DNA of 64,000 bases from positions 124,001 through 188,000 of the IMG/VR virus record IMGVR_UViG_3300020165_000007, one strand, 5' to 3'. Within the stretch, counting starts at the first letter, position 1; each line of letters starts with the position of its first letter. Shown here piece by piece: positions 17,396 through 56,087 of the stretch. The position numbers and the translations under genes are program-made. Below the pieces are notes generated by a model. The model saw only the letters and a program-made list of their open reading frames with translations, ran no database searches and was not told the DNA's origin.

Positions 17396-18798
17396 TTTTC
17401 TTTGGGTTTCCACGCATTTATTGATTCTGTGAATTCCTTACTATTAACTCTCACTCTTTCATAAATATCTGAGTTTTCAGGTTTTTTAAGTTTAAAACCT
17501 TTTTTTTTTAAGTTTTCTAAAAATTCCTTCTGAGACTTCGTAAATTCGTTTGTAAGACCTTCCCCATTTAGTAATGACTGTAAACCTTTCTTTTCTTTAC
17601 CCTTCATAACCTCTTCAAAAGGTTGTTCTTTTTTCATCGATTGATTATGTGTGTTGATATAACTATCTCTTTGTATTTCCTCTTTTTCTCCCCCTCCAAA
17701 TTCAACTTCAGGTATCTTATCACCACCGACTATCTTAAAATCTCTATAATCAGGACCCTCATTATTAGTAATGGTAAAATATATTATACCACCGTCCAAT
17801 AATTTACCTAATCCATTCATCTGAGAATTAAAAGGAAGTTCAATATTTGCATTATTATAGTAAGAACCCAATCTAACGACAGGTTCTCCCGTTTTTTTAT
17901 CTTCACCTTTAGCGACTACTACTGACCTAATAAATGCAATATCTTCAGGATATTTTTTCATTAAATCCATAAATTCTTTATTTATTTCTTCACGGTCTTT
18001 ATCTGTAAAAACTACTTTTTGTTTTCCTTTGTCATTTGCAGTATAAAAATTAAATTCTTTTAACTTTTCATCTATTTTTTCTGGTATTGAATTTTCCATT
18101 TCATTTTCTTTTAATACGTCTTTTAACCCTTCATTAACTTTATTTGTACACCAATTAGAATCTGAAAATTCTTGCCATGAACCACTACTCGGCGGGTCTA
18201 TAAAACCCCATTTTCCACCTCTTTCTTCTATCGGTAACGGTATATTTTTTCTACCTGTTTGTGAATCAGCAAAAAAGACAATTCTCTCATCTTCGTATTG
18301 ACTGTTTGGTTCTCTTTGAACGAATATTAAAGGCCAAACTCTTCCACAAGGTATACCTTTCAAGTAATCGACCACATCTCTAAATTGTTGATTTACAGTT
18401 GAGCTTACACCGCTTTTACCTAAATTTAATTTCTCTTTTTTTAACTCTCTACCACTTTTTTGTCTTGCGGGTGGTGATGGCGGTGTTCCTCCTGGGTTAG
18501 GTTGTGTTGTCGAGCCTGTTGTAGGAGATGGCGTAGTACTACCAGTAGGAGGAGGTGTTGTACTTATCTTTTTAGTGTAGTACGCTTTTGGTGGCATTGG
18601 AGGACCTGTGACAGTATCATCTTGATATAATTTATAATCTGAAATGTTATCACCGTTAGATGTGATTTTGTTTTTTAAATTTGGTTCATTATCCGGTCCT
18701 TCCCATCCTGCACCAGAAGGTGTGCCACTTTTTTTTTCAGTTTGTCCCCAACTAGTGGATTGTTCGTTTAGTATTATTTTATTTGACATTATATTCAT
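17392..18798 (-). CDS. Multidomain protein with P/T-rich linker and a domain shared with the M23 peptidase
   Basis: KIILNEQ leader; CGRVWP...WGFID...WQEFSDSNWCTNK segment. Confidence 0.7.
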   Translation of the reverse strand: MNIMSNKIILNEQSTSWGQTEKKSGTPSGAGWEGPDNEPNLKNKITSNGDNISDYKLYQDDTVTGPPMPPKAYYTKKISTTPPPTGSTTPSPTTGSTTQPNPGGTPPSPPARQKSGRELKKEKLNLGKSGVSSTVNQQFRDVVDYLKGIPCGRVWPLIFVQREPNSQYEDERIVFFADSQTGRKNIPLPIEERGGKWGFIDPPSSGSWQEFSDSNWCTNKVNEGLKDVLKENEMENSIPEKIDEKLKEFNFYTANDKGKQKVVFTDKDREEINKEFMDLMKKYPEDIAFIRSVVVAKGEDKKTGEPVVRLGSYYNNANIELPFNSQMNGLGKLLDGGIIYFTITNNEGPDYRDFKIVGGDKIPEVEFGGGEKEEIQRDSYINTHNQSMKKEQPFEEVMKGKEKKGLQSLLNGEGLTNEFTKSQKEFLENLKKKGFKLKKPENSDIYERVRVNSKEFTESINAWKPKEK

Positions 18799-20651
18799 TT
18801 TGATTTAAAATCACCATTATCATATACATAATAAGTATCAGTTCCATTACCTTTTCTTGACACTACATACCATGTTTTACCACCGTCCTCACCTGCTTTT
18901 TTCGCAGATAAGTAATTATATACATCCTCACTTAAATTATCCCTTACGAATGATTTGAAACTATCTTCCTCATTCTTATACGTAACAATCTCGGCAGATG
19001 GTAGAAGATTACGGACCTTATTTACTATTTCCATAATTATTCCATCAAATTCACTCATGTCGTACTTTCCTTGTGAGGCTGTTTCTATAAATGCATCAAC
19101 TATAGAATAACCCATACTGTCCTGAACGCTACCTAAACCTCCAGGTACAAGCCTTTCAATAATATTAACCATAGTTCCAACAAAGCTATTAGGGTCATCT
19201 TCCCCTTTCTGTCTAAGAACATCAAAAAGAACTCCAACTCTTTCGTAGGCCCATTCACTTAATCCTTGTTTCCATATTGTATTAAAATCAATTTTAAAAT
19301 TATTTAAATCCGTATCAAACATATCGGAAAGCCCGTCTAATAATGAGTTCCAACCAGACTCAATTAAACCTCTCAGAATATCAAATACAAATATAATAAC
19401 CGATTGTGCAAACCAACCTACAAAATAACCAACAAGTGATTGTGCCAAATAAACTAATGCATATTTCAACTTTTTACCTCCAGTTTCTCCTGCGGATGTC
19501 CTAATTAAACCCAAATACTGCTTATTTAAACCTGCAAATTGATTTGTAAGCATAAATTGACCTACTGACGTTCTAGGGTCAATTAATGATTTTACGGCCT
19601 CCATTCTTTGACCTTTAGTTAATAATTGTTTTACTGTTAATAATAATTCACCTGAAAATGACTTCATAACGTCTCCCATTATTTCTCCCACACCCTCTCC
19701 GGACTTCTCCCAAGTGTCATTAAAAATACTAAAAAACGGTATTTCACCATCCCTAATTAAATTTGTTATTTCAGAATCTAAACCTGCATCGGCAAGAACT
19801 TCTGCGGCCGCTCCGTCTTTTTTAATTTCTAACTGGTTTAATAATCTTGTTATTGCAACTGCATAAGCTTCTGTAATTTCTTTAATTTTTTTATCTGAAT
19901 TTTGTTGACTTTTGGCAATTGCGACATCAGTTATGTAACCCGCATTTAATTCCTTAATTTCCTGTTTTACCTTATCAAAACTTTTTACAAACAATGTAAA
20001 GAAATCTTGAATAAATAATGTTGGAGTTTTATCATCAATAACTTTTCTGAGCTTTCTCATTTGTCTCTTACTTAGTTTAGTAGGGGCTACACCTGATAAA
20101 GTATCTACAAAACTACTTGGTTTATTAACGTATATATCTAATTGTTTTTTTACAGTATCAAAAATCCCATTTACATTAATAGGTTTTTGTGGTGAGTCAC
20201 CAACAACACGATTTAATGCCGTTACTAACTCGGTACCGGGTTTCTTCATTCCTTTTCTTAATTTTTCTAAAAATTCTCTCTCACTCATACTATTCTTTCT
20301 TTGGATATCCTTTAAAAATCCTTTATAAAATTCTAATGCAAGTTCATCGTCGTCATTTATAAGTTTACCCAATAGAGTTTTTTCAGTTTCACCCATTTCG
20401 GATACTCTACCATTAAAATCTTCTAAAATATAAATAAGACTATCAAAATTTTCTCTTTTGAACGTTGTACCACCTATTTCTATTTCTAAAAAATCACTTT
20501 TTTTAAGTGCCTTATTGACATATTTTAATATGTTATCGTATACACTGCTACCAATACTTTCTTTTAATATCGTTTTAGGTAAAGACATAATTTCCTTCAT
20601 CCTATGTATTTCAATAAGAATATTAGGGTTAGTTAAATGTAATAGGTCCAT
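18795..20651 (-). CDS. Large helical protein with a hydrophobic segment
   Basis: Leader ILIEIHRMKEIMSL...ILKE; hydrophobic YALVYLAQSLVGYFVGWFAQSVIIFVF. Confidence 0.7.
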   Translation of the reverse strand: MDLLHLTNPNILIEIHRMKEIMSLPKTILKESIGSSVYDNILKYVNKALKKSDFLEIEIGGTTFKRENFDSLIYILEDFNGRVSEMGETEKTLLGKLINDDDELALEFYKGFLKDIQRKNSMSEREFLEKLRKGMKKPGTELVTALNRVVGDSPQKPINVNGIFDTVKKQLDIYVNKPSSFVDTLSGVAPTKLSKRQMRKLRKVIDDKTPTLFIQDFFTLFVKSFDKVKQEIKELNAGYITDVAIAKSQQNSDKKIKEITEAYAVAITRLLNQLEIKKDGAAAEVLADAGLDSEITNLIRDGEIPFFSIFNDTWEKSGEGVGEIMGDVMKSFSGELLLTVKQLLTKGQRMEAVKSLIDPRTSVGQFMLTNQFAGLNKQYLGLIRTSAGETGGKKLKYALVYLAQSLVGYFVGWFAQSVIIFVFDILRGLIESGWNSLLDGLSDMFDTDLNNFKIDFNTIWKQGLSEWAYERVGVLFDVLRQKGEDDPNSFVGTMVNIIERLVPGGLGSVQDSMGYSIVDAFIETASQGKYDMSEFDGIIMEIVNKVRNLLPSAEIVTYKNEEDSFKSFVRDNLSEDVYNYLSAKKAGEDGGKTWYVVSRKGNGTDTYYVYDNGDFKSK

Positions 20652-20724
20652 AGTTTTTTATAATAAATACTTGGCAGAATAAAAAAAAATTAATATATTT
20701 GTAGAGAACAAAATTAATTCAATA

Positions 20725-20949
20725 ATGAAATACTCAGTTAAGGAAGTTGTTATTTATAAAAAAGAAACAGTAACAATAAGGGAAGTACATAAAGTTGGTA
20801 GTACTTATGCTTATGTTCTGAGTAGTGGTGAAAGTTGTTTTGAGGATGAATTACGTAAATCATCTAAAGACCGTTATGTCTCACATGTCAATAACTTAAT
20901 TAGAGAGAATATGGACGATATTTTAAAGTACTGTTTTAGTCCTGTCTAA
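20725..20949 (+). CDS. Small hypothetical protein
   Basis: 74 aa, TATATTTG promoter element upstream. Confidence 0.65.
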   Translation: MKYSVKEVVIYKKETVTIREVHKVGSTYAYVLSSGESCFEDELRKSSKDRYVSHVNNLIRENMDDILKYCFSPV

Positions 20950-22747
20950 AAACAGATGAGTCGCAGCTATATTGTGTTAGTCTCATATCTGGTTCCGACT
21001 TTCTTTTACGTAATCCATCATAAAAATATATGGTGCCGTCAATATCATAGGATATCTCTTGTTCCCTTTCAACACTACTATCGTTTTTTCTTCTATTATA
21101 TTTTATTTCTTTTGCGTTTGGGTGATTGATAACACACGGATAGTCTTCTTTAAATTTATTCTTTTTTTCTTCGTCGCTTTTTGGTTTATCATCTGTACCC
21201 GAAACTAGTTCAAATATAGTTTTATTATTAGATTCCTCTAAAGTACGTAACGCTTCATAAAGTGATTCCATTGACTCCTCAGCTACTTTATCAGGGTTTT
21301 GACCTAACGCCCTTATAGTAGACGCCCCTAAAATTGTAGTAAATATACCACCCATCTGTAATCCCATATTTAAAGTAGATTTTAAAAAGTTTGTTTCTTC
21401 AAGTATTTCAGATACGGCCTCTAAAGATTTTTTAGTTAATGGTTTTGACATACCAGACTCATTCAATTTAATAATTGCGTCGTCTACATATTTTTTAAAA
21501 TTACCCGCCTTTGTGATTAATTCTCTACTTGAGGCATAAAAAGAATAAACAAGAGACCTTTCTTCTTTTGACAGATTTTTTAACGCCGACCAAATTACTG
21601 TAGGTTTAACCTCACCTGACAAGAATTTAATATAGTTTGTTATAAATCCAATAACCCTAACGAATGATGTTTTACCTATCTTTGTCCCTAATTGTTTAAA
21701 TACTGAAGAGCCTATGTCACCGAATAAAGGTATCAAACCGATAGATAATGATATAAGTGCACCAAATTTATCATTTTTATTTTTCCATAAATCGTAAGCA
21801 TGTGCAAATTCAATAGAAAATGATGCGACTGGATTTATAAAAAACATAAGACCAGCTAATAAATCACACCAAAATTCTTCATAGGCATAATCAATACCTA
21901 TTAATTTAAATGCCCCAACATTCTTACCTTCAGTACCAAACCATTCATCAAAAATACTATCCTCACCACAAACAAGTGAAGATAATTGTTTGAAACCAAT
22001 CTCTGACATTTCAGAAGCTTCATTCCACCATATTTCTAAACCACTTGCTTGTAAAACTTCTTTTTTAGGTTGTTGGTAGATATTATTGTTATCATTTTTA
22101 TAGTATTTAAAATACCAATCAATACTAAAAGGATTATTTTTATTACTCTCAGTGTTTAGATTCTTAGATATTTTACCCCCTAATAGAGTACGATAATTAG
22201 TGCCGTTTATTTTTAGTTTTTGAGAAACGCCATTAGGGTAAATTCTCTGTAGTTGGTCATATAACGAATTTCTTAATCCACTCTCAAACTCTTCTCCGTA
22301 TTTTTCACCGTATTCATTAAACCAATCGTCCATAGTTTTATCTGATGAGTTATTAATAGGAGACTCGATAAAACTTTCATACAACTCCTTCCAGTTAGAA
22401 TTAATTGTTTTTATTACTTTAGTGTTTTCCGGAAAATACATTACTCCTTTTGGTGTGTTATACATACACCACCCTTTATACACGGGGTGTTCGACTGTTC
22501 CTGCAACTGCTAAATCAGGACTACCACAATTTTTAGGGTACCCGAAATCACTCCCTGTTATATCTTCATCCGATTGATATTGTTTAATTTTAATAGGGTC
22601 ATTCTTTATTGAGGATGATATTTTACCTACCTCAACATCTCTTAATGGTCCTGATGGTTTTTTATCTTGTTCAGATAAAACTTTAGACCTATCGTAATTC
22701 ATAAGTCTATTCATCTCCACTAACTGTATTCTAATATTTTCCTCCAT
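20936..22747 (-). CDS. Large protein with hydrophobic hairpin (pre-toxin/membrane-inserting-like)
   Basis: Leader QLVEMNRLMNYDRSKVLSEQ; GALISLSIGLIPLFGDIG resembles pre-toxin TG-type helices. Confidence 0.6.
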   Translation of the reverse strand: MEENIRIQLVEMNRLMNYDRSKVLSEQDKKPSGPLRDVEVGKISSSIKNDPIKIKQYQSDEDITGSDFGYPKNCGSPDLAVAGTVEHPVYKGWCMYNTPKGVMYFPENTKVIKTINSNWKELYESFIESPINNSSDKTMDDWFNEYGEKYGEEFESGLRNSLYDQLQRIYPNGVSQKLKINGTNYRTLLGGKISKNLNTESNKNNPFSIDWYFKYYKNDNNNIYQQPKKEVLQASGLEIWWNEASEMSEIGFKQLSSLVCGEDSIFDEWFGTEGKNVGAFKLIGIDYAYEEFWCDLLAGLMFFINPVASFSIEFAHAYDLWKNKNDKFGALISLSIGLIPLFGDIGSSVFKQLGTKIGKTSFVRVIGFITNYIKFLSGEVKPTVIWSALKNLSKEERSLVYSFYASSRELITKAGNFKKYVDDAIIKLNESGMSKPLTKKSLEAVSEILEETNFLKSTLNMGLQMGGIFTTILGASTIRALGQNPDKVAEESMESLYEALRTLEESNNKTIFELVSGTDDKPKSDEEKKNKFKEDYPCVINHPNAKEIKYNRRKNDSSVEREQEISYDIDGTIYFYDGLRKRKSEPDMRLTQYSCDSSVFRQD

Positions 22748-22759
22748 ATCAAATAAATA

Positions 22760-23440
22760 TTACGTTAAAGTATTTGATTTACCTCTATTAATTCCAGATT
22801 CCCATTTACTATTTTGGTCAATCATATTTCCCTTACCTCTACTTATATTAGAATTCCATACATTAATAGTTAATTGATTTGCAGGTCCACGAGTTAAACC
22901 TGTTTCCCATGTAGAAGTATTACTGTTTGTAGAACTAGAATCTCCTCCTGTAGTTTCTCCTCCACCTTCATCTTGTTCGTTAAACTCAGACTCTACATTA
23001 CCATATATTTCGGGATACCTAAGACCAAACATTTTAAGTAATTCACCTGCCTTAGCATTCGCTTCATCCTCTATTTTACCACCAACATTTTGTATTTTAC
23101 CTTCAAGTTCACCGTCTTCATTTTGATGATGATGAACCAATTCATGTGCGACCGACCTCATAACGTCTTGTAACGCTCTTTCTTTAGTATATACCGTAAC
23201 TTCAGCATTCTCTATATCTGCATTTTCACCGTCTTCGTACCTATAAACCGCAGTTGTATCTACTTTGGATTTATCCTCCGTGTAATCAATACGAACGTTA
23301 TTTTTTATATTTAATTCTTTAACAGTTAAATCAACAAACTTATCTAATAAAATTCTTTCATTATTATCAAATGATTCATCACCCTCATTAATACTCATAA
23401 GGGTTTTTATTCTATTGATATCTTCGTTAAGTAAATTCAT
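22760..23440 (-). CDS. HExxH metallopeptidase-like protein
   Basis: RSVAHELVHHHQ...EDEANAKAG; leader LLNEDINRIKTLMSINE. Confidence 0.65.
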   Translation of the reverse strand: MNLLNEDINRIKTLMSINEGDESFDNNERILLDKFVDLTVKELNIKNNVRIDYTEDKSKVDTTAVYRYEDGENADIENAEVTVYTKERALQDVMRSVAHELVHHHQNEDGELEGKIQNVGGKIEDEANAKAGELLKMFGLRYPEIYGNVESEFNEQDEGGGETTGGDSSSTNSNTSTWETGLTRGPANQLTINVWNSNISRGKGNMIDQNSKWESGINRGKSNTLT

Positions 23441-23457
23441 ATTCAATAAATACTACG

Positions 23458-24432
23458 TTAGAAAGAACATGACGGAACTGTAATTTTTTTTTCACTTGTT
23501 TTATTGTTTATTTTTATTACAACAGATATTTCATGAGCACCACCTGTGGTGGGACCTAATTGTGATATAGTAACATCATAATTGTAAAAGAACATTAATT
23601 CTCCCGTATCTACACCCATATTTAATAATAAAGCATCCCTATAAGAGTATCCTTCTACAAGTCTTAACCCACCACCAAATAAGAATTTACCTTTTCTAAT
23701 ATTATTATTTAATGTTAGTTGTGTGAACTGACCTTGTCGTAGTATTGAAATTGATGGTGTATAAGTCACGTCTTCATTCCTATCGGTAGATTTATCTAAG
23801 GGTATTATCACCCCTCCGTGAATATTATATTTTACTGGTAAGTAACTTTCTCCATATATTAACGTTTGGTTCGGTTGGTTTATATGTGACACACTAAATC
23901 CTGCAAACCATTTATGATTAAATAAAAGTATTCCTGTACCTACATCAAAATAATTAACTTTAAAGTTATTTAAAAAAGATTCATTTGTGTAATTAGTAAA
24001 CGCGACACCGTTAAAAGAATCTTCAAAGAACAGTTTTTTACTATCTATGAAATTTTGCTTATAACTAAATTCCAAACCAAATTTAATATTTAAATTATTA
24101 GTTAGTTTTTGTTGATTACTATAATAGGTGTTAAATGAATTTAATGAGTATATTCCATTGGCGGACCTATCATTCATCATTAATATACCGAAACCACTTT
24201 TCAAATCTCTAATATATTGTTCGTAAGTTACAACGCTAGTTACGTATTGACTACCTAATGATGGCCAATGATTTCTATATGTCATACTTAACTCAGGACA
24301 ATTCCTTGACCCAGCGAATGCGGGATTCAAGTACAAAACACTACTGTTTATTTGTGAAAATGAAACGTCTTGAGAAAAACCTATTGCAAACAAACTTAAA
24401 AACCCAAAAATTAATAAAATCTTCTTAATCAT
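23458..24432 (-). CDS. PorP/SprF-family type IX secretion outer-membrane protein
   Basis: Signal peptide then QDVSFSQ, LYLNPAFAG, YRNHWP, HINQPN, YNYDVT, GAHEISV and terminal CSF; beta-barrel-like pattern. Confidence 0.85.
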   Translation of the reverse strand: MIKKILLIFGFLSLFAIGFSQDVSFSQINSSVLYLNPAFAGSRNCPELSMTYRNHWPSLGSQYVTSVVTYEQYIRDLKSGFGILMMNDRSANGIYSLNSFNTYYSNQQKLTNNLNIKFGLEFSYKQNFIDSKKLFFEDSFNGVAFTNYTNESFLNNFKVNYFDVGTGILLFNHKWFAGFSVSHINQPNQTLIYGESYLPVKYNIHGGVIIPLDKSTDRNEDVTYTPSISILRQGQFTQLTLNNNIRKGKFLFGGGLRLVEGYSYRDALLLNMGVDTGELMFFYNYDVTISQLGPTTGGAHEISVVIKINNKTSEKKITVPSCSF

Positions 24433-24498
24433 ACCTATAAATATCAAAAAATATGTCTATTTATTTGTAGATTAACTAAATATACTTATATTTGTAAT

Positions 24499-25902: not shown

Positions 25903-26214
25903 ATGAAAAGACAATTATTAATAGACGAATATTCATTTAACGATGGAGAATTGAATATAATTTTTCAAGATGGGGATAAAAATTACCGAGAAGATAACAT
26001 AGATGAAGATATTTTCGAATCTTATATTACCGCATCAGGTAGATTAGAAGGGTTTGAAGATATGTGGGATGGGTATAGTGAGTCTCATTATACTAAAGAC
26101 TATATTATGGACTATTCCTACTGGTTAAGTGAAATTTGTGAGAGTAGTGACATTTTAGATTTTATTTACTATTATTACGAAAGTAATAAATTACCTAAAA
26201 TACTTGAAGAATGA
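25903..26214 (+). CDS. Acidic hypothetical protein
   Basis: 103 aa ORF overlapping the rmlC start. Confidence 0.7.
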   Translation: MKRQLLIDEYSFNDGELNIIFQDGDKNYREDNIDEDIFESYITASGRLEGFEDMWDGYSESHYTKDYIMDYSYWLSEICESSDILDFIYYYYESNKLPKILEE

Positions 26215-26852
26215 ATTTAATCTCCACTTCCTTTGATAACGTATATCTTATTGAGGAACCTGTCCATACTGATGATAGGGGTTTTTTTATGGAAACATGG
26301 AATGAAATAGGATACTCTAATAGAAAGTTACTTAAAGATATACCTTCACTAAAAGCGATACAGAATGACGATTCATTATTCTCAACTCTGTTTGTTCAAG
26401 ATAACCTATCTAAATCAAAATTAGGGGTCTTTAGAGGACTACATTATCAAACAGGTGACTTTCCTCAGCCCAAATTAGTTAGAGTATTAAAAGGGTCCGT
26501 AATCGATTTTATAGTTGATTTGAGAGAGGATTCTAAAACCTACGGTAAGTTTGAGTTTTTTGAATTAAATGATAAAAATAATATGAGTTTATTTATTCCC
26601 TCATACTTCGCTCACGGATTTTTATCTTTAGAAGACGATACTCTTCTTTCTTACAAGTGTGGTAGTTATTACAGTAAAGAAAGTGAAGGAAGCGTAAATT
26701 ATAATGACCCAGTCATCAGACATGTAATTAACAATAAAGACACAATTAAAGACGTTATAGAAATTAACTTACCTCATCATAATGAAAAAGATTTACTCAT
26801 ATCTGATAAAGATAAAAACGCACCAAAATTCCTTTATAGAAGGCATGAATGA
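26211..26852 (+). CDS. rmlC: dTDP-4-dehydrorhamnose 3,5-epimerase
   Basis: DDRGFFME, FVQDNLSKS, RGLHYQ, VDLR, FAHGF, YKC and SDKD motifs. Confidence 0.93.
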   Translation: MNLISTSFDNVYLIEEPVHTDDRGFFMETWNEIGYSNRKLLKDIPSLKAIQNDDSLFSTLFVQDNLSKSKLGVFRGLHYQTGDFPQPKLVRVLKGSVIDFIVDLREDSKTYGKFEFFELNDKNNMSLFIPSYFAHGFLSLEDDTLLSYKCGSYYSKESEGSVNYNDPVIRHVINNKDTIKDVIEINLPHHNEKDLLISDKDKNAPKFLYRRHE

Positions 26853-28277: not shown

Positions 28278-28688
28278 ATGACTGTACATGAACTTAGTGA
28301 CTACTTCAACCAATCTCCGAACATGGCAAAAGTTTATAAAGAACATAAGTCCATCGGTCGTTTGATTCGTAGTAATATGTTTAAGTACTCTAATCCTCGT
28401 CGTTGGAATAATAAGGACTTGACTTATAAAATCACGTACATTAAGGTCGACAAGAGTGAAAATTTAATAGTCAATCTCAAAGTCTCAGGTACGATGGGTA
28501 ATAATTGGGGTGGAGAAAAGGGGACTTGTGTTACTGAATATGTTAAAGTTAATTTCTCAAGTTCCCGTAGACGTAATGATGATATTCGTAGGGCGGTTCG
28601 AGAAGATGTTCAAAAGTTTTTCCGTCTTTTCGGTATGGATAGTTATAGGGTTGAGATTGGTAAGATTAAAGTGTGTAAAGAACTTTAA
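28278..28688 (+). CDS. Basic hypothetical protein
   Basis: Promoter TTTG 28226 / TATATTTG 28250. Confidence 0.75.
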   Translation: MTVHELSDYFNQSPNMAKVYKEHKSIGRLIRSNMFKYSNPRRWNNKDLTYKITYIKVDKSENLIVNLKVSGTMGNNWGGEKGTCVTEYVKVNFSSSRRRNDDIRRAVREDVQKFFRLFGMDSYRVEIGKIKVCKEL

Positions 28689-41517: not shown

Positions 41518-41606
41518 CTAAGATAAAGTTCTTTGATATGATGGTATAGTAAATAAGTAAAACTTTCGCTGATGACCCCTCTGCGACAAAAAAGGGGAAC
41601 CAATAC

Positions 41607-41680
41607 GGGGACGTAGCTCAATTGGTTAGAGCATCAAGCTTATATCTTGAAGGTCGGAGGTTCGATTCCTCTCGTCCCTA
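41607..41680 (+). tRNA. tRNA-Ile(TAT)
   Basis: TCAAG-CTTATAT-CTTGA, A73, intact D and T arms. Confidence 0.85.
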
Positions 41681-41698
41681 CTAAAACTATAATAAAAT

Positions 41699-42121: not shown

Positions 42122-42125
42122 AATT

Positions 42126-42201
42126 GCCACTATAGCTTAGTTGGTAGAGCAGCTGATTTGTAATCAGCAGGTCGGCGGTTCGAGTCCGTCTAGTGGCTCC
42201 A
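42126..42201 (+). tRNA. tRNA-Thr(TGT)
   Basis: GCTGA-TTTGTAA-TCAGC; CCA encoded. Confidence 0.94.
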
Positions 42202-42212
42202 TATAAAAAAGA

Positions 42213-42292
42213 GGGGGTATCGCATAGTGGCAATTGCGGCTGACTGTAAATCAGCTCCTTCGGGTTCGGAGGTTCGAGTCCTTCTACCCCCA
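42213..42292 (+). tRNA. tRNA-Tyr(GTA)
   Basis: GCTGA-CTGTAAA-TCAGC with variable arm. Confidence 0.93.
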
Positions 42293-42295
42293 CAT

Positions 42296-42369
42296 TCTCC
42301 CTTAGCTCAGTTGGTTAGAGCATCTGACTGTTAATCAGAGGGTCCTTGGTTCGAGCCCAAGAGGGAGAG
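42296..42369 (+). tRNA. tRNA-Asn(GTT)
   Basis: TCTGA-CTGTTAA-TCAGA, G73. Confidence 0.93.
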
Positions 42370-42448
42370 CGGCGCCTGAAGACTGAGAGAAGGGGAGTGA
42401 CTATTAATTTAGTCCTCCTCTTTTTGTATTTATAAATAAAATAATAAA

Positions 42449-44218: not shown

Positions 44219-46234
44219 TTAGTTAAAGAACTCTTTCTTAATTTGATAATTACCATTAGTGTATTTTATTTTCTTAATATAAATTCCTGATGAGGTTATC
44301 TCACTTAAATTAATCTTAGCACCGTAGATATTATAGTATTCTATATTTTCTACGGTGTTTTGATTTTCAGGAATTTGTATTCCTTTAGAATTAATAATTT
44401 GTTTAACCGACTCAGGGATTTCAGTTTCTAACATCATACCATTCTCACACTGTAGACCAAATACGGAAATAAAGTCTAATATATCGTCAACACCAATAAT
44501 ACTATCCTGATTAAAATCTAACGGACTACATTCTACAGTTAATCCAAAGTTTTGTAGTAAAGGAAATAAGTCAGAGGTACCTACAATACCATCTTCATCT
44601 AAATCCCAAGGACAATCACCTAATGGTGGACATACATCAACAGGAGGACCCACATAAAAAGGTAATATCTCTTCATCTCCCCAATTTCCTGTTACTGTGT
44701 TTAGAGTGTCATTACCATTTATAATAGAAGTCGGACCCCCACAAGGGTAAAACATACCATTTCCAAATAAATCTTCTAAAACTAAAACATAATTTCCTTC
44801 TTCTAAACAATATGTGTTAGTTTCAACCTCACATGCGTATACTTCATTATCATAGTAACCCCCCTCATCAATTAATTCCTCAGTATCTGAGTTGTATAGA
44901 CTCCATTCGAATCCATAAGGTAAAGCATCAAATTCTATAGTAATGTCTATAAAAGTACCTTCATAATTGTTAATTTGAAGGGTATTAGTATTATTATCTT
45001 CATATATGTCACCTAATACTTCTACATTAACCTCTATATCTGAGATACCGTATTCTATATTGATATTAGGTATTATTATAACTTCACTTTCAGCAAAACC
45101 TAAATTTCCTACCCAATTAATAGAACTACTTTCACCATTTAGAGAATAATTAATAGTGGCTTCAGTTAATGTATCACCAAAACTCTGTAAGTTGAAAATT
45201 ATATCCTTTGTGGTTGAACATCCCAAATTAGGAACTGATAACCCATTAATAGAAACGTCTATCCCCCCAACGGCACCACATGCTAAATTATTATCCACAA
45301 CTCCAGGTCTAAAAGTTTCTAATTGGGATAACATTCTTAAAGTCTGTCCTTGGGTAAAACTTTCCATACAATTATCAGTAGTATAATCCATAAAATTCTC
45401 TATTAAATCACCACCACAAGCACCTCCATTTAAGGGACATCCAATGTTTCCTGTAGTGACAGGTGTATCACATACTTTATCCCCTTGTGTTTCACAGTTA
45501 GTGTTGGTAGGGGTACATGTACTTGTTTGATTAAATGTGTGAAATAACCCACAATAGTGTCCCATTTCATGAACCAGAGTTCTATTTAACCCATAACTAC
45601 CTACATTAGTAATTCCAAAAGCGTTAGTCCCCATAAATACCCCATAATTAGTTGGGGGTAAATAAGCGAACCCTAACGGACTACCAAAAGGCGCTATAAA
45701 AACATTACAATAATTATTTCTATCATATCCAATTTGATTGGATACTTGAATGTGGTTATTGTAAAAAGCCGTAGCGTCCCACTCCTCTATATTTAAATTA
45801 TCCCAATCATAATATCTAATACCTTCAATAGGTTCTCCATCAGTAGAAGCATTTGCTATACAAAAATTTATCTGTGTGTTTGCAGTAGGTACATCACTAA
45901 ATTCTCCCGCAAAATTATCATTTAAATTATCAAAAGCTTCTTGTATAAATTCCACAGGTAAATGGTAGTCAGTTCCGTAGGGTTCACCAAAATGAATTAC
46001 ATGAACTATTACAGGAATTGTAATAGGTAAATCTGATTTGTTTGAAATTCTTATCGTCTCTTCTGATTTTTTCGCTATAGATTCAAGTTTTTGGTAGCTC
46101 CTTTTAAATTTAGGGTCTTTTAGTTGCTGTTCAAATAATATATCAGTACCACATCTCGTGGGTTCCTGAGAAAATATTATGTTATTAAATAAACTAAATA
46201 AAAATACTAAAATTAAAGGTCTTAAAAATGTCAT
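44219..46234 (-). CDS. Secreted M43 (pappalysin/ulilysin-type) zinc metalloprotease with dockerin-like repeats and a CTD-like tail
   Basis: Signal peptide; RCGT cysteine switch; HEMGHYCGLFHTF; Met-turn NFMDY; DLDEDGIVGTSD/DFNQDSIIGVDD; YYNIYGAKI...GIYIKK tail. Confidence 0.88.
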   Translation of the reverse strand: MTFLRPLILVFLFSLFNNIIFSQEPTRCGTDILFEQQLKDPKFKRSYQKLESIAKKSEETIRISNKSDLPITIPVIVHVIHFGEPYGTDYHLPVEFIQEAFDNLNDNFAGEFSDVPTANTQINFCIANASTDGEPIEGIRYYDWDNLNIEEWDATAFYNNHIQVSNQIGYDRNNYCNVFIAPFGSPLGFAYLPPTNYGVFMGTNAFGITNVGSYGLNRTLVHEMGHYCGLFHTFNQTSTCTPTNTNCETQGDKVCDTPVTTGNIGCPLNGGACGGDLIENFMDYTTDNCMESFTQGQTLRMLSQLETFRPGVVDNNLACGAVGGIDVSINGLSVPNLGCSTTKDIIFNLQSFGDTLTEATINYSLNGESSSINWVGNLGFAESEVIIIPNINIEYGISDIEVNVEVLGDIYEDNNTNTLQINNYEGTFIDITIEFDALPYGFEWSLYNSDTEELIDEGGYYDNEVYACEVETNTYCLEEGNYVLVLEDLFGNGMFYPCGGPTSIINGNDTLNTVTGNWGDEEILPFYVGPPVDVCPPLGDCPWDLDEDGIVGTSDLFPLLQNFGLTVECSPLDFNQDSIIGVDDILDFISVFGLQCENGMMLETEIPESVKQIINSKGIQIPENQNTVENIEYYNIYGAKINLSEITSSGIYIKKIKYTNGNYQIKKEFFN

Positions 46235-51294: not shown

Positions 51295-51368
51295 GCGCCC
51301 ATAGCTCAGTTGGTTAGAGCATCCGACTCATAATCGGCAGGTCCTAGGTTCAAGTCCTAGTGGGCGCA
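51295..51368 (+). tRNA. tRNA with CAT anticodon (likely Ile2/lysidine type; elongator Met possible)
   Basis: CCGA-CTCATAA-TCGG; C4-G69 and C5-G68 pairs; no initiator features. Confidence 0.85.
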
Positions 51369-51381
51369 CAAACACATTACG

Positions 51382-51858
51382 ATGAATATTTTTATTTTAG
51401 ATACCGATGTTAAAAAATGTGCTGAATATCATAACGACAAACATGTCGTTAAGATGATACTTGAAAGCGCACAACTATTATGTGGAGTTCATCACATGAC
51501 AGAATCTAGTATGGATTACGTACCATATAAGTTATCTCATAAAAATCATCCTTGCTCGATATGGGCTCGTGAAAATATGTCAAACTACTTATGGTTATGT
51601 GAACTTGGTCTTGAACTATGTAAGGAATATACATACCGTTACGGTCGTCGACACAAATCACAGGAGGTTATTGAATGGTGTATTGAAAATCGTCCTAAAA
51701 TACCTGAAGATGATTTTACTACCCCACCTAAGGCAATGCCTGAAGAATATAAAGTAAATGATGTTGTCCAGTCATATCGTAATTACTATATAGGTGAGAA
51801 AAAATCTTTTAGTAAATGGAAAAATAGAGATTCACCTGTTTGGTTTAATCTAAATTAG
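51382..51858 (+). CDS. Pyrimidine-dimer DNA glycosylase/endonuclease V-like protein
   Basis: MNIFILD...HNDKHVVKMILESAQLL...HKNHPCSIW...PKAMP...YRNYY. Confidence 0.8.
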   Translation: MNIFILDTDVKKCAEYHNDKHVVKMILESAQLLCGVHHMTESSMDYVPYKLSHKNHPCSIWARENMSNYLWLCELGLELCKEYTYRYGRRHKSQEVIEWCIENRPKIPEDDFTTPPKAMPEEYKVNDVVQSYRNYYIGEKKSFSKWKNRDSPVWFNLN

Positions 51859-52335: not shown

Positions 52336-52420
52336 GGAGAGATGGCAGAGCGGTCGAATGCGACGGTCTTGAAAACCGTTGTACCGAAAGGTACCGGGGG
52401 TTCGAATCCCTCTCTCTCCA
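52336..52420 (+). tRNA. tRNA-Ser(TGA)
   Basis: ACGGT-CTTGAAA-ACCGT; GTACC-GAAA-GGTAC variable arm. Confidence 0.93.
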
Positions 52421-52441
52421 CATAATTTAAAAATTAAAAAA

Positions 52442-53113
52442 ATGGAATACGGAGAAGATTTTAAAAAGTATGCAATGAGTGACCATAATATCTCATCATT
52501 TAATATGGATTATTATGAAAAACAAATTAAAGGTTCACTCACACCATATATTCTTGAAGAAAGGGAAATGAGAGTTACTCAGATGGATATATTCTCTAGA
52601 TTAATGAGGGACCGTGTATTGTGGGTGGCCGGTGGTGTTGATGACCGTATGTCAACAGTGGTCCAAGCTCAACTAATGTATCTTGACTCTGTAGATAATT
52701 TAGATATTACAATGCATATCGATTCTCCAGGTGGTTCAGTTAAATCTGGTTTGTCTATGGTAGATGTGATGCAGTATATTAAATCGGACATTGTTACTGT
52801 AAATACGGGAATGGCAGCTTCTATGGGTTCAGTACTATTAGGTGCGGGGACTAAAGGAAAAAGGTCGTCACTAAGATTTTCAAAGACAATGTTACACCAA
52901 TCTAGCGGAGGGGCTTATGGAAATATTCAAGACGCTAGAATTAATTTTGAAGAGTGGGAAAAAGTTAATAAAATTCTTTTTGAATTACTCGGAGAGTTCT
53001 GTGGTAAAGACCCAAAACAGGTTATTGAAGACTCCTCAAGGGACTTTTGGATGGACGCTAATGAAGCACTTGAGTATGGTATTATCGATGAGGTGATAAA
53101 AGTTAAGTCGTAA
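52442..53113 (+). CDS. clpP: ATP-dependent Clp protease proteolytic subunit
   Basis: DIFSRLMRDR, IDSPGGSV, GMAASMG (catalytic Ser), MLHQ (His), RDFWM (Asp); start at MEYGEDF. Confidence 0.95.
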   Translation: MEYGEDFKKYAMSDHNISSFNMDYYEKQIKGSLTPYILEEREMRVTQMDIFSRLMRDRVLWVAGGVDDRMSTVVQAQLMYLDSVDNLDITMHIDSPGGSVKSGLSMVDVMQYIKSDIVTVNTGMAASMGSVLLGAGTKGKRSSLRFSKTMLHQSSGGAYGNIQDARINFEEWEKVNKILFELLGEFCGKDPKQVIEDSSRDFWMDANEALEYGIIDEVIKVKS

Positions 53114-53199: not shown

Positions 53200-53823
53200 A
53201 TGGATTTTATAAAAATTTTAGAGGTGTTACTTACTTCAATTACTTCAATTGTAGTAGCTTTGGTCGGTGCTGGGTTTTTTAAGAGATATAATGATAAAAA
53301 AACAAAATTAGAATCTAAGGGTACTTTACTCGCTCAAATTAAAAAGGATGAGATAGTTCATTTAGCGATAAGAGATGTCAGACGTAGATATAATGCGGAT
53401 AGAGTTTATGTATGGCAATTTCATAACGGAGGGTATTTCTACACTTCATCCCCTATGCAAAAATTATCAATAACCTATGAAAGGTGTTCCCAAGGACTAG
53501 AAAGAAAATCTGAAAAAAATCAAAATCATTTAATAACTAACTTTACCACGTATATAAAAGATGTGATGGACGGTAAAATGTATTTTCCAGATATAACAAA
53601 ATTACAAGATATTGGATTGAGGTCATTGGCACAATCTCAAGGAACTACTTCTCATTGCGCGACTCCTATTTACGATAAACAAGGCCATTTAATAGCTTTG
53701 TTATGTTTAGATTGGGTTTGGAGTGATATACCCTCTGAATTTTTAAAAAAGGACGGAACGTTCACACAAGATTTTATAGATGAGTTTAGTAAAGATTCTG
53801 ACACATTAGACCCTTACTTATGA
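53200..53823 (+). CDS. N-terminal TM plus GAF-like domain, candidate T4-T-like holin
   Basis: TM helix, then ADRVYVWQFHNG...PIYDKQGHLIALLCLDW. Confidence 0.55.
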   Translation: MDFIKILEVLLTSITSIVVALVGAGFFKRYNDKKTKLESKGTLLAQIKKDEIVHLAIRDVRRRYNADRVYVWQFHNGGYFYTSSPMQKLSITYERCSQGLERKSEKNQNHLITNFTTYIKDVMDGKMYFPDITKLQDIGLRSLAQSQGTTSHCATPIYDKQGHLIALLCLDWVWSDIPSEFLKKDGTFTQDFIDEFSKDSDTLDPYL

Positions 53824-54053
53824 ATGTATTAAACGCATATAAAAAAAATTACAGTATAATAAAAGTTATTATATTATTATCTATATTATCTGTAGTTAAT
53901 ACGTTAGAGGGGTTTTTATACGCCGAGTATGGGTTTTCTAATGTATTTATATTTACAGAAATATTTAGCTTTGCACTTACTATGATAATAGTGCTTGGAA
54001 TATGGTGTGGGTGGGAAAAAGATAAATGTACTACTTACACTAAAGATAAATAA
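53820..54053 (+). CDS. Small two-TM membrane protein
   Basis: Two hydrophobic helices; overlaps the upstream stop. Confidence 0.55.
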   Translation: MNVLNAYKKNYSIIKVIILLSILSVVNTLEGFLYAEYGFSNVFIFTEIFSFALTMIIVLGIWCGWEKDKCTTYTKDK

Positions 54054-54883: not shown

Positions 54884-54934
54884 AACCTAATAATACTATA
54901 AATAGTAAGTATTTATATAATATACGATAGTAAA

Positions 54935-55174
54935 ATGGGTCATATTAGAAAAAATATTAAAAGGGTTTTAAAAGAGTACGATAAAGAGGAATTATTTGAC
55001 TACACACCAAATTTTTCCGCGGATGAATTACTCAAGTATATAGAATCAGAATGGGACGTAGAGATGTTGAGTTTAGTTAACTCAAAAATAAATGAGAGGA
55101 TTGATTTCTTAAACCGTATTGCTGACATGAGTGCCAAGAAAGAAGTTAAAGGTTTTAAAAGATATGAAGATTAA
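54935..55174 (+). CDS. Small protein with IKRVLKE leader
   Basis: MGHIRKNIKRVLKE; GTATTTATA upstream. Confidence 0.7.
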   Translation: MGHIRKNIKRVLKEYDKEELFDYTPNFSADELLKYIESEWDVEMLSLVNSKINERIDFLNRIADMSAKKEVKGFKRYED

Positions 55175-56087
55175 ATTAATCGATATACTATTAGAAGAAG
55201 TTACTGAGTCTCAACTACTACCGTCACCAATCGGACCTACTAGTGAAACTTCTTCGTTTGGTTCTCGTTCTATCGGTGGAGTAAGGGGTCAACATAACGG
55301 TATAGATTTACACTCACCTGTGGGTACTCAGATACTTAATCCGGCTAGTGGTAGAGTTATAACAGCAAAAAAAGTCGATGAGACATGGAATGAAGTACTT
55401 ATTAGAACAGAAAACAAACCTAATGGTAATGATAGGTGTGGTTCTCGTGTTGTCATAGAACATACATCAGGAATACTAAACGGTCTAAAAACTATTTACT
55501 GTCATTTGTCAGAAATAAATGTGGGTAAGGGTGATGTTATTGAAGAAGGTCAATTAATTGGTCTTACAGGTGGTAAACGTAATAGTAAAGGGTCAGGTAG
55601 AACTATCGGTCCACACTTACATTTAGGGGTTAAAAATAATAATGAACCTTTAGACCCTAAAAACTACTTTTCATTCAAACGGGGAGGTCTTGGAGTGTCA
55701 TCCGTACAAAGTAATAGTACAAATACAGGAACCACTAAAAGTTCACCTATAATACCTTCGGAGTACATTAAAAATAATTTAAAAAAGAAGGCCATAGGTA
55801 AAAATAAAGTTGAAGTAAATAATCAACTTAAAGACCTTAAAAATTACCTTTTCTACGATATTAAGTGTGCAAGAGCGTTTCCTGTAATATATGTACAATG
55901 GGAACCTAACCCACAAAATGAACCTGAACGGGTTGTATTATTTGGGGATTTGCAAGATGGTACACCTTATCAAGTGATTCCTGTAGAAAAAAGAGGTGGT
56001 GAGTGGGGATTTATTGATTCTTCTGTAGGTGAATGGCAAGAATTTTCAGAATCTAATTGGTGTACGAATAAGTACAGACTTAAGTAA
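55164..56087 (+). CDS. M23-family peptidoglycan endopeptidase with novel C-terminal domain
   Basis: HNGID, YCHL and GPHLH motifs; start MKIKLIDILLEE. Confidence 0.88.
   Translation: MKIKLIDILLEEVTESQLLPSPIGPTSETSSFGSRSIGGVRGQHNGIDLHSPVGTQILNPASGRVITAKKVDETWNEVLIRTENKPNGNDRCGSRVVIEHTSGILNGLKTIYCHLSEINVGKGDVIEEGQLIGLTGGKRNSKGSGRTIGPHLHLGVKNNNEPLDPKNYFSFKRGGLGVSSVQSNSTNTGTTKSSPIIPSEYIKNNLKKKAIGKNKVEVNNQLKDLKNYLFYDIKCARAFPVIYVQWEPNPQNEPERVVLFGDLQDGTPYQVIPVEKRGGEWGFIDSSVGEWQEFSESNWCTNKYRLK

What the first reader, a model, noticed from the sequence alone, without database searches (positions are those of the whole stretch)
18139..56075. Unnamed ~75-aa domain shared by two distant, otherwise unrelated genes
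Seen: about 18139-18365 (minus) encodes CGRVWPLIFVQREPNSQYEDERIVFFAD...PIEERGGKWGFID...WQEFSDSNWCTNK. About 55850-56075 (plus) encodes CARAFPVIYVQWEPNPQNEPERVVLFGD...PVEKRGGEWGFID...WQEFSESNWCTNK. Each follows an S/T/P-rich linker and is bracketed by two Cys; one is fused to an M23 peptidase. Inference: a mobile Trp-rich module, possibly a new cell-wall-binding or partner-docking domain closed by a disulfide.
Basis: seen in the sequence. Interest (0 to 1): 0.6.

Follow-up and report, generated by a model that had tools for sequence, protein, structure and literature searches.

The report
New adaptor domain shared by phage proteins
Two distant genes of an uncultured T4-like jumbo phage share a real ~87-residue domain with no known relatives; it is probably a module that ties different cargo, including a cell-wall-cutting enzyme, to one phage-built assembly, but its binding partner is not shown.

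Summary
P0001 (window 17392-18798, minus) and P0002 (55131-56087, plus) share a ~87-residue domain (BLASTP 1e-29, about 55% identity). Each copy follows an S/T/P-rich linker and is bracketed by two Cys. P0002 carries an intact M23 peptidase.

The domain matches nothing in Pfam, PHROGs, NCBIfam, PDB sequences or four structure libraries. A profile search of 1.84 billion proteins found only this phage clade.

It is not a free-floating module. It is the Cys-stapled form of the N-terminal domain of a two-part protein family, "W + C-module". That family is confined to uncultured T4-like jumbo phages whose hosts are probably marine Bacteroidota. W is always fused to the C-module or ends the gene just upstream. 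The M23 copy is an old graft.

W sits at the C-terminal end of interchangeable cargo: small Cys-rich modules, a 724-aa membrane protein, and M23. Most of these cargo proteins start with a short L/I-x-E tag like the T4 capsid-targeting sequence.

- **Best reading (about 0.45):** a protein-docking adaptor that brings cargo to one phage assembly, probably among packaged or ejected proteins.
- **Main rival (about 0.25):** peptidoglycan or glycan binding.

Function is inferred, not shown.

The parts
17392..18798 (-). P0001 gene (468 aa): short N-terminal tag, variable N-module, P/T-rich linker, W domain, C-module
   Evidence: ORF list and translation. Orthologues P0007-P0010. The C-module family has 60 clusters.
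18139..18399 (-). W domain, copy 1 (P0001 residues 134-220; Cys151 and Cys217)
   Evidence: BLASTP 1e-29 to copy 2. Coordinates. AF2 model: one helix plus a five-stranded antiparallel sheet, pLDDT 71.
18469..18564 (-). Pro/Thr/Ser-rich linker of P0001 (residues 79-110); holds a sharp recombination breakpoint at about 18502-18513
   Evidence: Loci L008 and L009 are 99.8-99.96% identical to the window below 18502 and unrelated above 18513.
18565..18798 (-). Variable N-module of P0001 (residues 1-78), starting with a short L/I-x-E-Q tag
   Evidence: Orthologues that are 99% identical from the linker onward carry unrelated N-termini. Tag statistics.
17395..18093 (-). C-module of P0001 (residues 236-468): a conserved family with no Pfam hit and no fold match
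   Evidence: 60 clusters. A separate gene in L005, L010 and L011. No Pfam hit. No fold match.
55164..56087 (+). P0002 gene (ORF opens at GTG 55131; orthologues start at ATG 55164): short tag, M23 peptidase, S/T-rich linker, W domain
55290..55658 (+). M23 metallopeptidase domain (residues 54-176; HxxxD at 55-59, HxH at 162-164)
   Evidence: Pfam PF01551 5.5e-20. NCBIfam peptidoglycan endopeptidase models. It is the only M23 in the genome.
55683..55811 (+). S/T-rich linker and basic stretch of P0002 (residues 185-227)
   Evidence: Read directly from the sequence.
55812..56072 (+). W domain, copy 2 (P0002 residues 228-314; Cys246 and Cys311), at the C-terminus
   Evidence: It is 82-83% identical among M23 orthologues, against 63-64% for the catalytic part.
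18795..20651 (-). 618-aa protein directly upstream of P0001: shared N-terminal leader, a TM-like segment and a small C-terminal tail; part of the variable cassette
   Evidence: Leader HMM 9.8e-13. TM-like residues 405-426. Replaced by unrelated genes in L005, L008 and L009. Its tail aligns with the C-tail of the L037 M23 orthologue at E 0.003.
20936..22747 (-). 603-aa leader-bearing protein with TM-like segments; part of the variable cassette
   Evidence: The same position in L010, L011 and L012 holds leader + PG_binding_1 proteins.
22760..23446 (-). 228-aa leader-bearing protein, conserved in the operon
23458..24447 (-). Phage-encoded PorP/SprF-family outer-membrane protein with a signal peptide, at the head of the same-strand gene block
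   Evidence: Pfam PF11751 4e-45. Signal peptide. Conserved in L005, L006, L010 and L011.
16760..17413 (-). 217-aa protein overlapping the end of P0001; conserved in every syntenic locus
13649..16645 (+). 998-aa repeat-rich protein with a signal peptide and a C-terminal CHU_C (type B T9SS) domain, convergent with the operon
   Evidence: Pfam PF13585 4.6e-17. Signal peptide. Internal repeats.

Best explanation
The shared stretch is a genuine ~87-residue alpha+beta domain (W domain): one N-terminal helix, then a five-stranded antiparallel sheet. In this clade it is stapled by a Cys pair.

It is the clade-specific form of the N-terminal domain of a two-part protein, W + C-module. That protein is found only in an uncultured group of T4-like jumbo phages, probably of marine Bacteroidota.

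W acts as a constant adaptor at the C-terminal end of interchangeable cargo. The cargo seen so far is small Cys-rich modules, a long membrane protein and the M23 peptidase, each tied on by a flexible low-complexity linker. Its most likely job is protein-protein docking: it brings its cargo to the same phage-built assembly that holds the C-module protein. The M23 peptidase gained access to that assembly by acquiring a copy of W.

Most W carriers start with a short L/I-x-E tag like the T4 capsid-targeting sequence, and the phage has a gp21-type prohead protease. The assembly is therefore probably among the packaged or ejected virion proteins. M23 would then open the peptidoglycan at entry.

Shown: the domain, its family, its strict coupling to the C-module, the cargo swapping, the tag and the T4-like head genes. 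Inferred: docking, virion location and the disulfide.
For: 1. **Coupling to the C-module.** In every lineage examined, W is either fused to the C-module or is the C-terminus of the gene immediately upstream.
   - Fused: P0001, P0026, P0030, P0037, L018-L028.
   - Split: L005 195 aa | 238 aa; L010 724 aa | 247 aa; L011 166 aa | 252 aa, with gene gaps of 1-25 nt.
2. **Constant versus variable parts.** Near-identical strains (99.8-99.96% DNA identity) switch to unrelated sequence exactly inside the linker before W. The N-modules differ completely.
3. **Narrow distribution.** A profile search of 1.84 billion representatives found only this clade. P0014-P0016 are repeat artefacts. No cultured phage has it.
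4. **Strong constraint.** W is more conserved than the enzyme it is attached to: 82-83% against 63-64%. The two copies are an old duplication.
5. **A second shared tail.** A more distant M23 orthologue (L037) carries a different C-terminal tail. That tail aligns end to end with the tail of the window's 618-aa operon protein (E 0.003). M23 may therefore have twice borrowed its tail from this operon.
6. **PG_binding_1 is already in use.** These phages use the ordinary PG_binding_1 domain where they need peptidoglycan binding.
7. **The tag.** [ILV]-x-E-[QS] occurs in the first 20 residues of 13 of 17 W/C carriers against 13 of 231 other genes.
8. **T4-like head genes.** Gp23 and a gp21-type protease are present. 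T4 gp21 cleaves after L/I-x-E, and T-even internal proteins share only a targeting sequence (PMC9026906, PMC3012670).
9. **No Sec signal.** P0001 and P0002 have none, while the neighbouring PorP/SprF and CHU_C proteins do.
Against: - No partner is identified.
- AF2 on the fused W + C-module gave pTM 0.41, so there is no confident packing of W on the C-module.
- If W binds the C-module, the site in P0001 would be occupied in cis, so M23-W would need an oligomeric or third-party target.
- The conserved aromatic and polar residues, the position behind a linker on a wall hydrolase, and the Cys pair would also suit a glycan-binding module.
- The L037 tail similarity is marginal (22.7% identity).
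- The tag is short, the genome is AT-rich, and the 17 carriers are related to each other, so the Fisher value overstates independence.
- No virion proteomics exists for this uncultured lineage.
Confidence: 0.45

Rival explanations
1. W is a new peptidoglycan- or envelope-glycan-binding module. It holds M23 and the C-module protein on the cell wall, as SH3b does for lysostaphin or PG_binding_1 does for jumbo-phage endolysins.
For: W sits C-terminal to an intact M23 behind a flexible linker. The invariant residues are rich in Trp/Phe and in Glu/Gln/Asn/Asp. The Cys pair suggests work in an oxidising compartment. Sister phages have leader-bearing wall hydrolases with PG_binding_1 attached, so wall anchoring of such enzymes is a theme in this group. 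A 77-aa two-TM holin-like ORF lies about 1.1 kb upstream of P0002.
Against: There is no sequence or fold similarity to any known wall-binding family. W is confined to one phage clade, although Gram-negative peptidoglycan is nearly universal. Wall binding does not explain the strict coupling to the C-module or the cargo swapping at the linker. The same phages already use PG_binding_1. The genome also has two Amidase_2 proteins that could serve as endolysin.
Confidence: 0.25
2. W is a homotypic association module. The W of M23 pairs with the W of P0001 (dimer or sheet extension), so the shared domain itself is the contact.
For: There are exactly two copies per genome. Both are under strong constraint. 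An exposed sheet edge is plausible in the helix plus five-strand model.
Against: Lineages with W + C-module show no sign of a second W carrier in the fragments available, though those are only 14-23% complete. The three Cys-type W lineages are about equally distant (53-57% identity), so there is no sign of pairwise co-evolution. This was not tested by prediction.
Confidence: 0.1
3. W has no binding role of its own. It is a stable folding unit or spacer, or it serves packaging or ejection; for example, a compact domain that passes the portal and tail and separates cargo from the C-module.
For: No ligand or partner was found. The domain is small and compact, like the T4 internal protein fold described in PMC9026906.
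Against: A spacer would not be more conserved than the catalytic domain. It would also not keep about 30 invariant, largely aromatic and charged positions across paralogues.
Confidence: 0.1
4. W is a novel type IX secretion signal, or a PorP/SprF-binding C-terminal domain, used with the phage's own PorP/SprF protein.
For: W lies in the same gene block as a phage PorP/SprF and opposite a CHU_C cargo gene. It is at the extreme C-terminus in P0002, P0012, and the L010 and L011 proteins.
Against: There is no Sec signal peptide on any W carrier, while the true T9SS proteins next door have one. There is no profile match to CHU_C or Por_Secre_tail. The predicted fold is helix plus sheet, not the CTD beta-sandwich. 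W is internal in P0001.
Confidence: 0.04

Closest known systems
Cell-wall-targeting domains of modular peptidoglycan hydrolases (SH3b of lysostaphin, PG_binding_1 of jumbo-phage endolysins, LysM)
   Same: A small domain tied by a flexible linker to a wall hydrolase (M23). It is more conserved than a mere tail would be and is rich in aromatic residues.
   Different: There is no sequence or fold match to any of them. W is confined to one phage clade. Its main home is a non-enzymatic two-part protein, not a hydrolase. Wall binding is untested.
Conserved attachment domains of phage tail-fibre, tailspike and adaptor systems, where a constant anchor carries exchangeable parts
   Same: There is a constant part (W + C-module) and a swapped variable part. 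The recombination breakpoint sits at the domain boundary, and strains are otherwise 99.8-99.96% identical.
   Different: Here the variable part is N-terminal and small (60-110 aa), not a C-terminal receptor-binding domain. No tail or baseplate homology was found for any gene of the operon.
T4 internal proteins (IPI-III, Alt) with a capsid-targeting sequence cleaved by gp21
   Same: A T4-like phage with gp23 and gp21 homologues. A diverse, polymorphic protein set shares only a short N-terminal tag that ends in L/I-x-E (PMC9026906, PMC3012670).
   Different: The leader here is longer in many members (25-30 aa). Several members carry wall-binding or wall-cutting domains or TM segments, which T4 internal proteins do not. 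Packaging and cleavage are not shown. W itself has no counterpart in T4.
Rosetta-stone (fusion/fission) domain pairs
   Same: W and the C-module occur fused in some lineages and as adjacent, tightly spaced genes in others.
   Different: Fusion shows functional coupling, not necessarily direct contact. The structure predictions gave no confident W/C-module interface.

Membership tests
Peptidase_M23 (N-terminal part of P0002) | Profile match above the curated cut-off | tested here: met
   PF01551 5.5e-20, 71.8 bits against a cut-off of 28.7; confirmed in six-frame search.
Peptidase_M23 (N-terminal part of P0002) | Zinc-binding HxxxD and HxH motifs | tested here: met
   Residues 55-59 and 162-164 in the translation.
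Known peptidoglycan-binding domains (PG_binding_1, LysM, SH3b/GW, SPOR, OmpA_C) | Sequence profile match of the W domain | tested here: not met
   No relevant Pfam hit at E up to 1 and no NCBIfam hit at E up to 0.1 on W or on the whole proteins. PDB profile search best E 0.32, unrelated proteins.
Known peptidoglycan-binding domains (PG_binding_1, LysM, SH3b/GW, SPOR, OmpA_C) | Shared fold | tested here: not met
   Foldseek PDB: no hit at E 0.001 or better. VIA wide: best Z 5.9 (GAR domain), within the noise range. Atlas and BFVD: nothing clear. The model pLDDT is only 71, so this is weak negative evidence.
Known peptidoglycan-binding domains (PG_binding_1, LysM, SH3b/GW, SPOR, OmpA_C) | Binding to sacculi or muropeptides | not testable with these tools
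   Needs a pull-down or ITC experiment.
T9SS C-terminal secretion domains (type A Por_Secre_tail, type B CHU_C) | Profile match | tested here: not met
   No hit on W, while the neighbouring 998-aa protein hits CHU_C at 4.6e-17.
T9SS C-terminal secretion domains (type A Por_Secre_tail, type B CHU_C) | N-terminal Sec signal peptide on the carrier | tested here: not met
   No hydrophobic N-terminal segment in P0001 or P0002. One is present in the PorP/SprF and CHU_C proteins (hydropathy only).
WG / KWG beta-repeat proteins | Profile match or tandem repeats of the G-x-W-G-hydrophobic hairpin | tested here: not met
   Only one such hairpin per domain. No Pfam hit at E up to 1. The resemblance was recalled from memory and is local only.
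W + C-module family (defined here) | HMM match to both halves, in order, fused or in adjacent genes | tested here: met
   P0001 and 9 of the 13 IMG/VR loci match both HMMs. Split pairs occur in L005, L010 and L011. P0002 matches W only.
T4-type capsid-targeted internal proteins | Short N-terminal tag ending in L/I-x-E | tested here: met
   13 of 17 carriers against 13 of 231 other genes. A longer shared leader is found by HMM in at least 5 window proteins.
T4-type capsid-targeted internal proteins | gp21-type prohead protease and gp23 capsid protein in the same genome | tested here: met
   PF03420 1.1e-23 and PF07068 1.7e-62.
T4-type capsid-targeted internal proteins | Presence in the head and removal of the tag | not testable with these tools
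   Needs virion mass spectrometry. The lineage is uncultured.
Disulfide-closed domain | The two Cys conserved together | tested here: met
   Both present in 6 sequences and both absent in 5; none has only one. The states follow subfamily lines, so this may be one evolutionary event.
Disulfide-closed domain | The two Cys close in space, and the protein in an oxidising compartment | not testable with these tools
   Model coordinates are not returned, and localisation is unknown.

The most novel reading that the evidence does not exclude
W is one of at least two interchangeable C-terminal address modules in an undescribed cargo system of T4-like jumbo phages of Bacteroidota. In this reading, a polymorphic set of envelope-attacking proteins (wall hydrolases, wall binders, membrane proteins) is marked by a capsid-targeting-like N-terminal leader. 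These proteins are packaged, ejected into the periplasm and assembled there through small adaptor domains. The M23 peptidase joined the system by copying the address of an operon protein, and did so more than once.
Probability: 0.2. Interest if true: 0.75.

Novelty: new variant of a known kind. Interest (0 to 1): 0.55.

Why it matters
If W is a docking adaptor, it gives a handle on how large uncultured marine phages recruit enzymes such as a wall peptidase into a multi-protein entry or envelope machine. It would also give a small, portable tag for loading cargo onto that machine. If W binds the wall instead, it is a new peptidoglycan-binding fold from phages of Gram-negative hosts, where such domains are rare. 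Either way it defines a new domain family, with a partner C-module family of more than 60 clusters, in a phage group with no cultured member. It also points to a neighbourhood that deserves study: a shared leader on many proteins, and a phage-borne PorP/SprF plus type B CTD cargo pair.

Tried and rejected
- **Family and sequence searches on W and on the whole proteins.** Pfam, PHROGs, NCBIfam and a PDB profile search found nothing beyond M23.
- **Fold searches.** The W model (PDB Foldseek, VIA wide, ESM Atlas, BFVD) and the W + C-module model (PDB Foldseek, VIA wide) gave nothing above noise. Both protein-atlas look-ups gave nothing usable.
- **Complex prediction.** W of P0012 against the split C-module of L005 scored 0.00, no verdict. 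It counts neither for nor against binding.
- **False positives.** Hits P0014-P0016 from the large profile search are repeat or low-complexity matches.
- **Misalignment.** In the first mixed alignment (A4) the W-only fragments were misplaced, so it was replaced by A5 and A8.
- **WG/KWG repeat and GW/SH3b resemblance.** Rejected; it is only a local hairpin motif.
- **T9SS signal idea.** Rejected; there is no signal peptide and no profile match.
- **ClpP.** PHROGs calls window 52379-53113 a head maturation protease, but Pfam shows an ordinary ClpP (3e-57). It is therefore not evidence that P0002 lies in a head module.
- **Cultured phages.** No match to W, the C-module or PorP/SprF.
- **M23 in related records.** The genome search cannot reach the ENA contigs. 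Five IMG/VR fragments that carry the C-module have no M23, but they are only 14-23% complete.
- **Host.** A species-genome scan for the PorP/SprF protein found no relative.
- **L037 tail.** hhalign finds no relation between the L037/618-aa tail and W.
- It was rerun from stored files.
- **Not used.** Sequencing-run tools, because expression would not separate the hypotheses.

Full report
**1. The observation**

The window is bases 124001-188000 of a 270,383-base IMG/VR virus record. It is about 32% G+C and holds 12 tRNA genes.

- P0001 is window 17392-18798 (minus strand), 468 aa.
- P0002 is window 55131-56087 (plus strand), 318 aa. Its orthologues start at the ATG at 55164.
- The two proteins share one stretch only: BLASTP E 1e-29, about 55% identity over the core.
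- With its N-terminal helix, the domain covers P0001 residues 134-220 (18139-18399) and P0002 residues 228-314 (55812-56072).
- A six-frame search of the whole genome finds just these two copies.
- Both copies follow low-complexity S/T/P-rich linkers and are bracketed by two Cys.
- P0002 has an intact M23 peptidase: Pfam 5.5e-20, with HxxxD and HxH motifs present.
- The two coding stretches are 64% identical in DNA and 56% at third codon positions. The duplication is therefore old and maintained by selection.

**2. Is the domain known?**

No.

- Pfam, PHROGs, NCBIfam and a profile search of PDB sequences give nothing for the domain.
- A profile search of 1.84 billion representative proteins returned seven hits. 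Four are real and belong to this clade: an M23 orthologue, two P0001-type fragments, and P0012. Three are repeat artefacts.
- No cultured phage record has the domain.
- AlphaFold2 on the small alignment gives a helix followed by a five-stranded antiparallel sheet, pLDDT 71.
- Foldseek against PDB and BFVD, VIA-align against 48,161 chains, and the ESM Atlas found nothing above the noise level. The best was Z 5.9 to a GAR domain.

**3. The domain has a home**

Locus L005 is a metagenomic contig syntenic with window 13.6-25.6 kb. There the P0001 gene is split in two: P0012 (195 aa: N-module, Pro/Ala linker, W at the C-terminus), and a 238-aa protein that is 75% identical to P0001 residues 236-466.

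That C-terminal part, the C-module, is a family of at least 60 clusters at 90% identity. All come from metagenomes and none has a Pfam domain.

Members of 350-470 aa carry an N-terminal region that aligns with W but lacks the Cys pair. The conserved core is a hydrophobic strand ending in Gly, a G-(E/K)-W-G-W hairpin, and a W-x-x-F motif.

In lineages where the C-module is a separate gene, the W-like domain is the C-terminus of the gene just upstream:
- a 724-aa membrane protein in L010;
- a 166-aa protein in L011.

The gaps between these genes are 1-2 nt. Nine of the 13 IMG/VR loci match both HMMs in a single ORF.

W and the C-module are thus a coupled pair that has been fused and split repeatedly. 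The M23 fusion is the exception, and it was seen only in the Cys-type clade. The two Cys are both present in six sequences and both absent in five. This fits a staple acquired once.

**4. Cargo swapping**

Orthologues of P0001 that are 99% identical from the linker onward have unrelated N-termini. Contigs L008 and L009 are 99.8-99.96% identical to the window below position 18502 and unrelated above 18513. The breakpoint therefore lies inside the Pro-rich linker coding sequence.

The upstream genes also differ between lineages. The window has 603-aa and 618-aa genes; L005 has 313-aa and 390-aa genes; L009 has a 408-aa gene. One small four-Cys N-module recurs in lineages with different W types.

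W + C-module is therefore the constant part, and what is hung on W by the linker is exchangeable. Among M23 orthologues, W is 82-83% identical while the catalytic part is 63-64%.

**5. Context**

*T9SS genes.* The same-strand gene block begins with a phage-encoded PorP/SprF protein (4e-45). It faces a 998-aa repeat protein that ends in a CHU_C type B T9SS domain (4.6e-17). Both have signal peptides. A second small CHU_C ORF lies elsewhere in the genome. Type B CTD proteins are known to be anchored by PorP-like partners (PMC9143113). This points to a Bacteroidota host; no host genome match was found.

*T4-like head genes.* The phage has a Gp23 capsid protein (1.7e-62) and a gp21-type prohead protease (1.1e-23) just upstream of the window. 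A large virion protein is shared with T4-like cyanophages.

*A shared leader.* At least five window proteins share a 25-30-residue N-terminal leader: 169, 228, 474, 603 and 618 aa. The two that were not used to build the HMM are found at residue 1, with E 2.4e-5 and 1.1e-3. In sister phages the same leader precedes PG_binding_1 proteins and a PG_binding_1 + TseH-like hydrolase.

*A short tag on W carriers.* W carriers start with a short version of the leader's end. [ILV]-x-E-[QS] occurs within 20 residues in 13 of 17 carriers against 13 of 231 other genes. The carriers are related to each other, so this overstates independence. The more distant M23 orthologue L037 has the full leader.

*T4 precedent.* T4 gp21 cleaves after L/I-x-E, and the T-even internal proteins are a diverse set that share only a capsid-targeting sequence (PMC9026906, PMC3012670).

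*No Sec signal.* P0001 and P0002 lack Sec signals.

*Late-promoter-like motif.* The T4 late-promoter consensus as I recall it occurs 32 times in the window against 17 expected. It lies upstream of the small ORF that leads into P0002, and upstream of the 618-aa/P0001/217-aa genes. This is weak evidence in AT-rich spacers.

*Other wall hydrolases.* The genome has one M23, two Amidase_2 proteins, one PG_binding_1 protein and no phage lysozyme.

**6. What W most likely does**

I favour a docking or assembly adaptor (about 0.45). The evidence that fits this:
- strict coupling to the C-module;
- the swap point at the linker;
- restriction to one phage clade;
- conservation above that of the attached enzyme;
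- use of ordinary PG_binding_1 elsewhere in these phages.

All of this fits a module that recognises a phage-specific partner better than a module that recognises a universal polymer.

A further hint comes from the L037 M23 orthologue. In place of W it carries a 66-residue tail that aligns end to end with the tail of the window's 618-aa operon protein (E 0.003, 22.7% identity). That tail is unrelated to W. If this is real, M23 has twice taken its tail from this operon.

The leader and the T4-like head genes make a packaged or ejected location plausible. M23 would then act on the wall at entry.

The weak points:
- No partner is known.
- AF2 does not pack W on the C-module (pTM 0.41).
- If the target is the C-module, P0001 would occupy it in cis.
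- The one complex prediction gave no verdict and is not counted either way.

**7. Rivals**

- **Wall or glycan binding (about 0.25).** It fits the position behind M23, the aromatic and polar invariant residues, the Cys pair, and a nearby 77-aa two-TM holin-like ORF. It does not explain the coupling to the C-module or the narrow distribution.
- **Homotypic W-W pairing (about 0.1)** and **a non-binding structural role (about 0.1)** remain open.
- **A T9SS signal role (about 0.04)** is unlikely. There is no signal peptide, no profile match and a different predicted fold.

**8. Novelty and verdict**

The domain and its partner C-module are new families with no detectable relatives outside an uncultured phage clade. 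The kind of thing, a shuffled adaptor or targeting module on phage proteins, is known. I rate it a new variant of a known kind, with interest 0.55. The function remains an inference that simple binding experiments and virion proteomics would settle.

Noticed in passing
window 23458-24447 (-) and 13649-16645 (+); also G000 198574-198837 (+), outside the window: The phage encodes its own PorP/SprF-family outer-membrane protein (4e-45). It also encodes a 998-aa repeat-rich protein that ends in a CHU_C type B T9SS domain (4.6e-17). Both have signal peptides. A second small CHU_C ORF lies elsewhere in the genome. The pair is conserved in related contigs. No cultured phage matches the PorP/SprF protein, and I found no paper describing phage-borne T9SS cargo/anchor pairs.
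   Followed up: partly
window 3325-3834 (-), 9538-10962 (-), 18795-20651 (-), 20936-22747 (-), 22760-23446 (-); also 63064-63756 (-): A shared 25-30-residue N-terminal leader, ending in an L/I-x-E-Q/S motif, heads at least five otherwise unrelated proteins. In sister phages it heads PG_binding_1 proteins and a TseH-like wall hydrolase. It resembles the T4 capsid-targeting sequence plus a gp21 cleavage site. More genes elsewhere in the genome start with the short form.
   Followed up: partly
window about 18502-22750: A hypervariable cassette covers the N-module of P0001 and the 618-aa and 603-aa genes. It is replaced by unrelated genes in strains that are 99.8-99.96% identical next door. One boundary lies inside the Pro-rich linker coding sequence at 18502-18513.
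   Followed up: yes
L037:1498-2298 and window 18795-18995 (-): A more distant M23 orthologue (51% identical) has the full leader. In place of W it has a 66-residue tail that aligns end to end with the C-terminal tail of the window's 618-aa protein (E 0.003). This may be a second shared tail module.
   Followed up: partly
window 53820-54053 (+): A 77-aa ORF with two TM-like segments and a charged C-terminus, holin-like, lies about 1.1 kb upstream of the M23 gene. Next to it is a GAF-domain protein with an N-terminal TM segment (53200-53823).
   Followed up: no
window 15800-16330 (+): The 998-aa CHU_C protein contains several diverged tandem repeats (about 70-75% DNA identity, offsets of about 78 and 156 bases). 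The repeat number differs between related contigs (998, 909 and 912 aa, and 1159 aa in L010).
   Followed up: no
window 39842-42370, 51295-51369, 52336-52421: There are twelve tRNA genes, ten of them in a cluster of about 2.5 kb.
   Followed up: no
window 34002-34847 (-), 63064-63756 (-); G000 244803-245399 (-): Other wall-related genes: two Amidase_2 proteins, and a 230-aa protein with a leader-like N-terminus, a Pro-rich linker, PG_binding_1 and a Cys-rich tail. No phage lysozyme family hit in the genome.
   Followed up: partly
window 52379-53113 (+), 28685-31270 (-), 26211-26852 (+), 44219-46234 (-), 11015-11584 (+), 51382-51858 (+): Auxiliary genes: ClpP (which PHROGs labels a head maturation protease), a PPK2-domain protein, dTDP-sugar isomerase, an M43-like metallopeptidase, a CAP-domain protein and a pyrimidine-dimer glycosylase.
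   Followed up: no
whole window: The octamer TATAAATA, the T4 late-promoter consensus as I recall it, occurs 32 times against 17 expected (0 of 100 shuffles reach 32). Sites include 54897 (+), ahead of the ORF that leads into P0002, and 20751 (-), ahead of the 618-aa/P0001/217-aa genes.
   Followed up: partly
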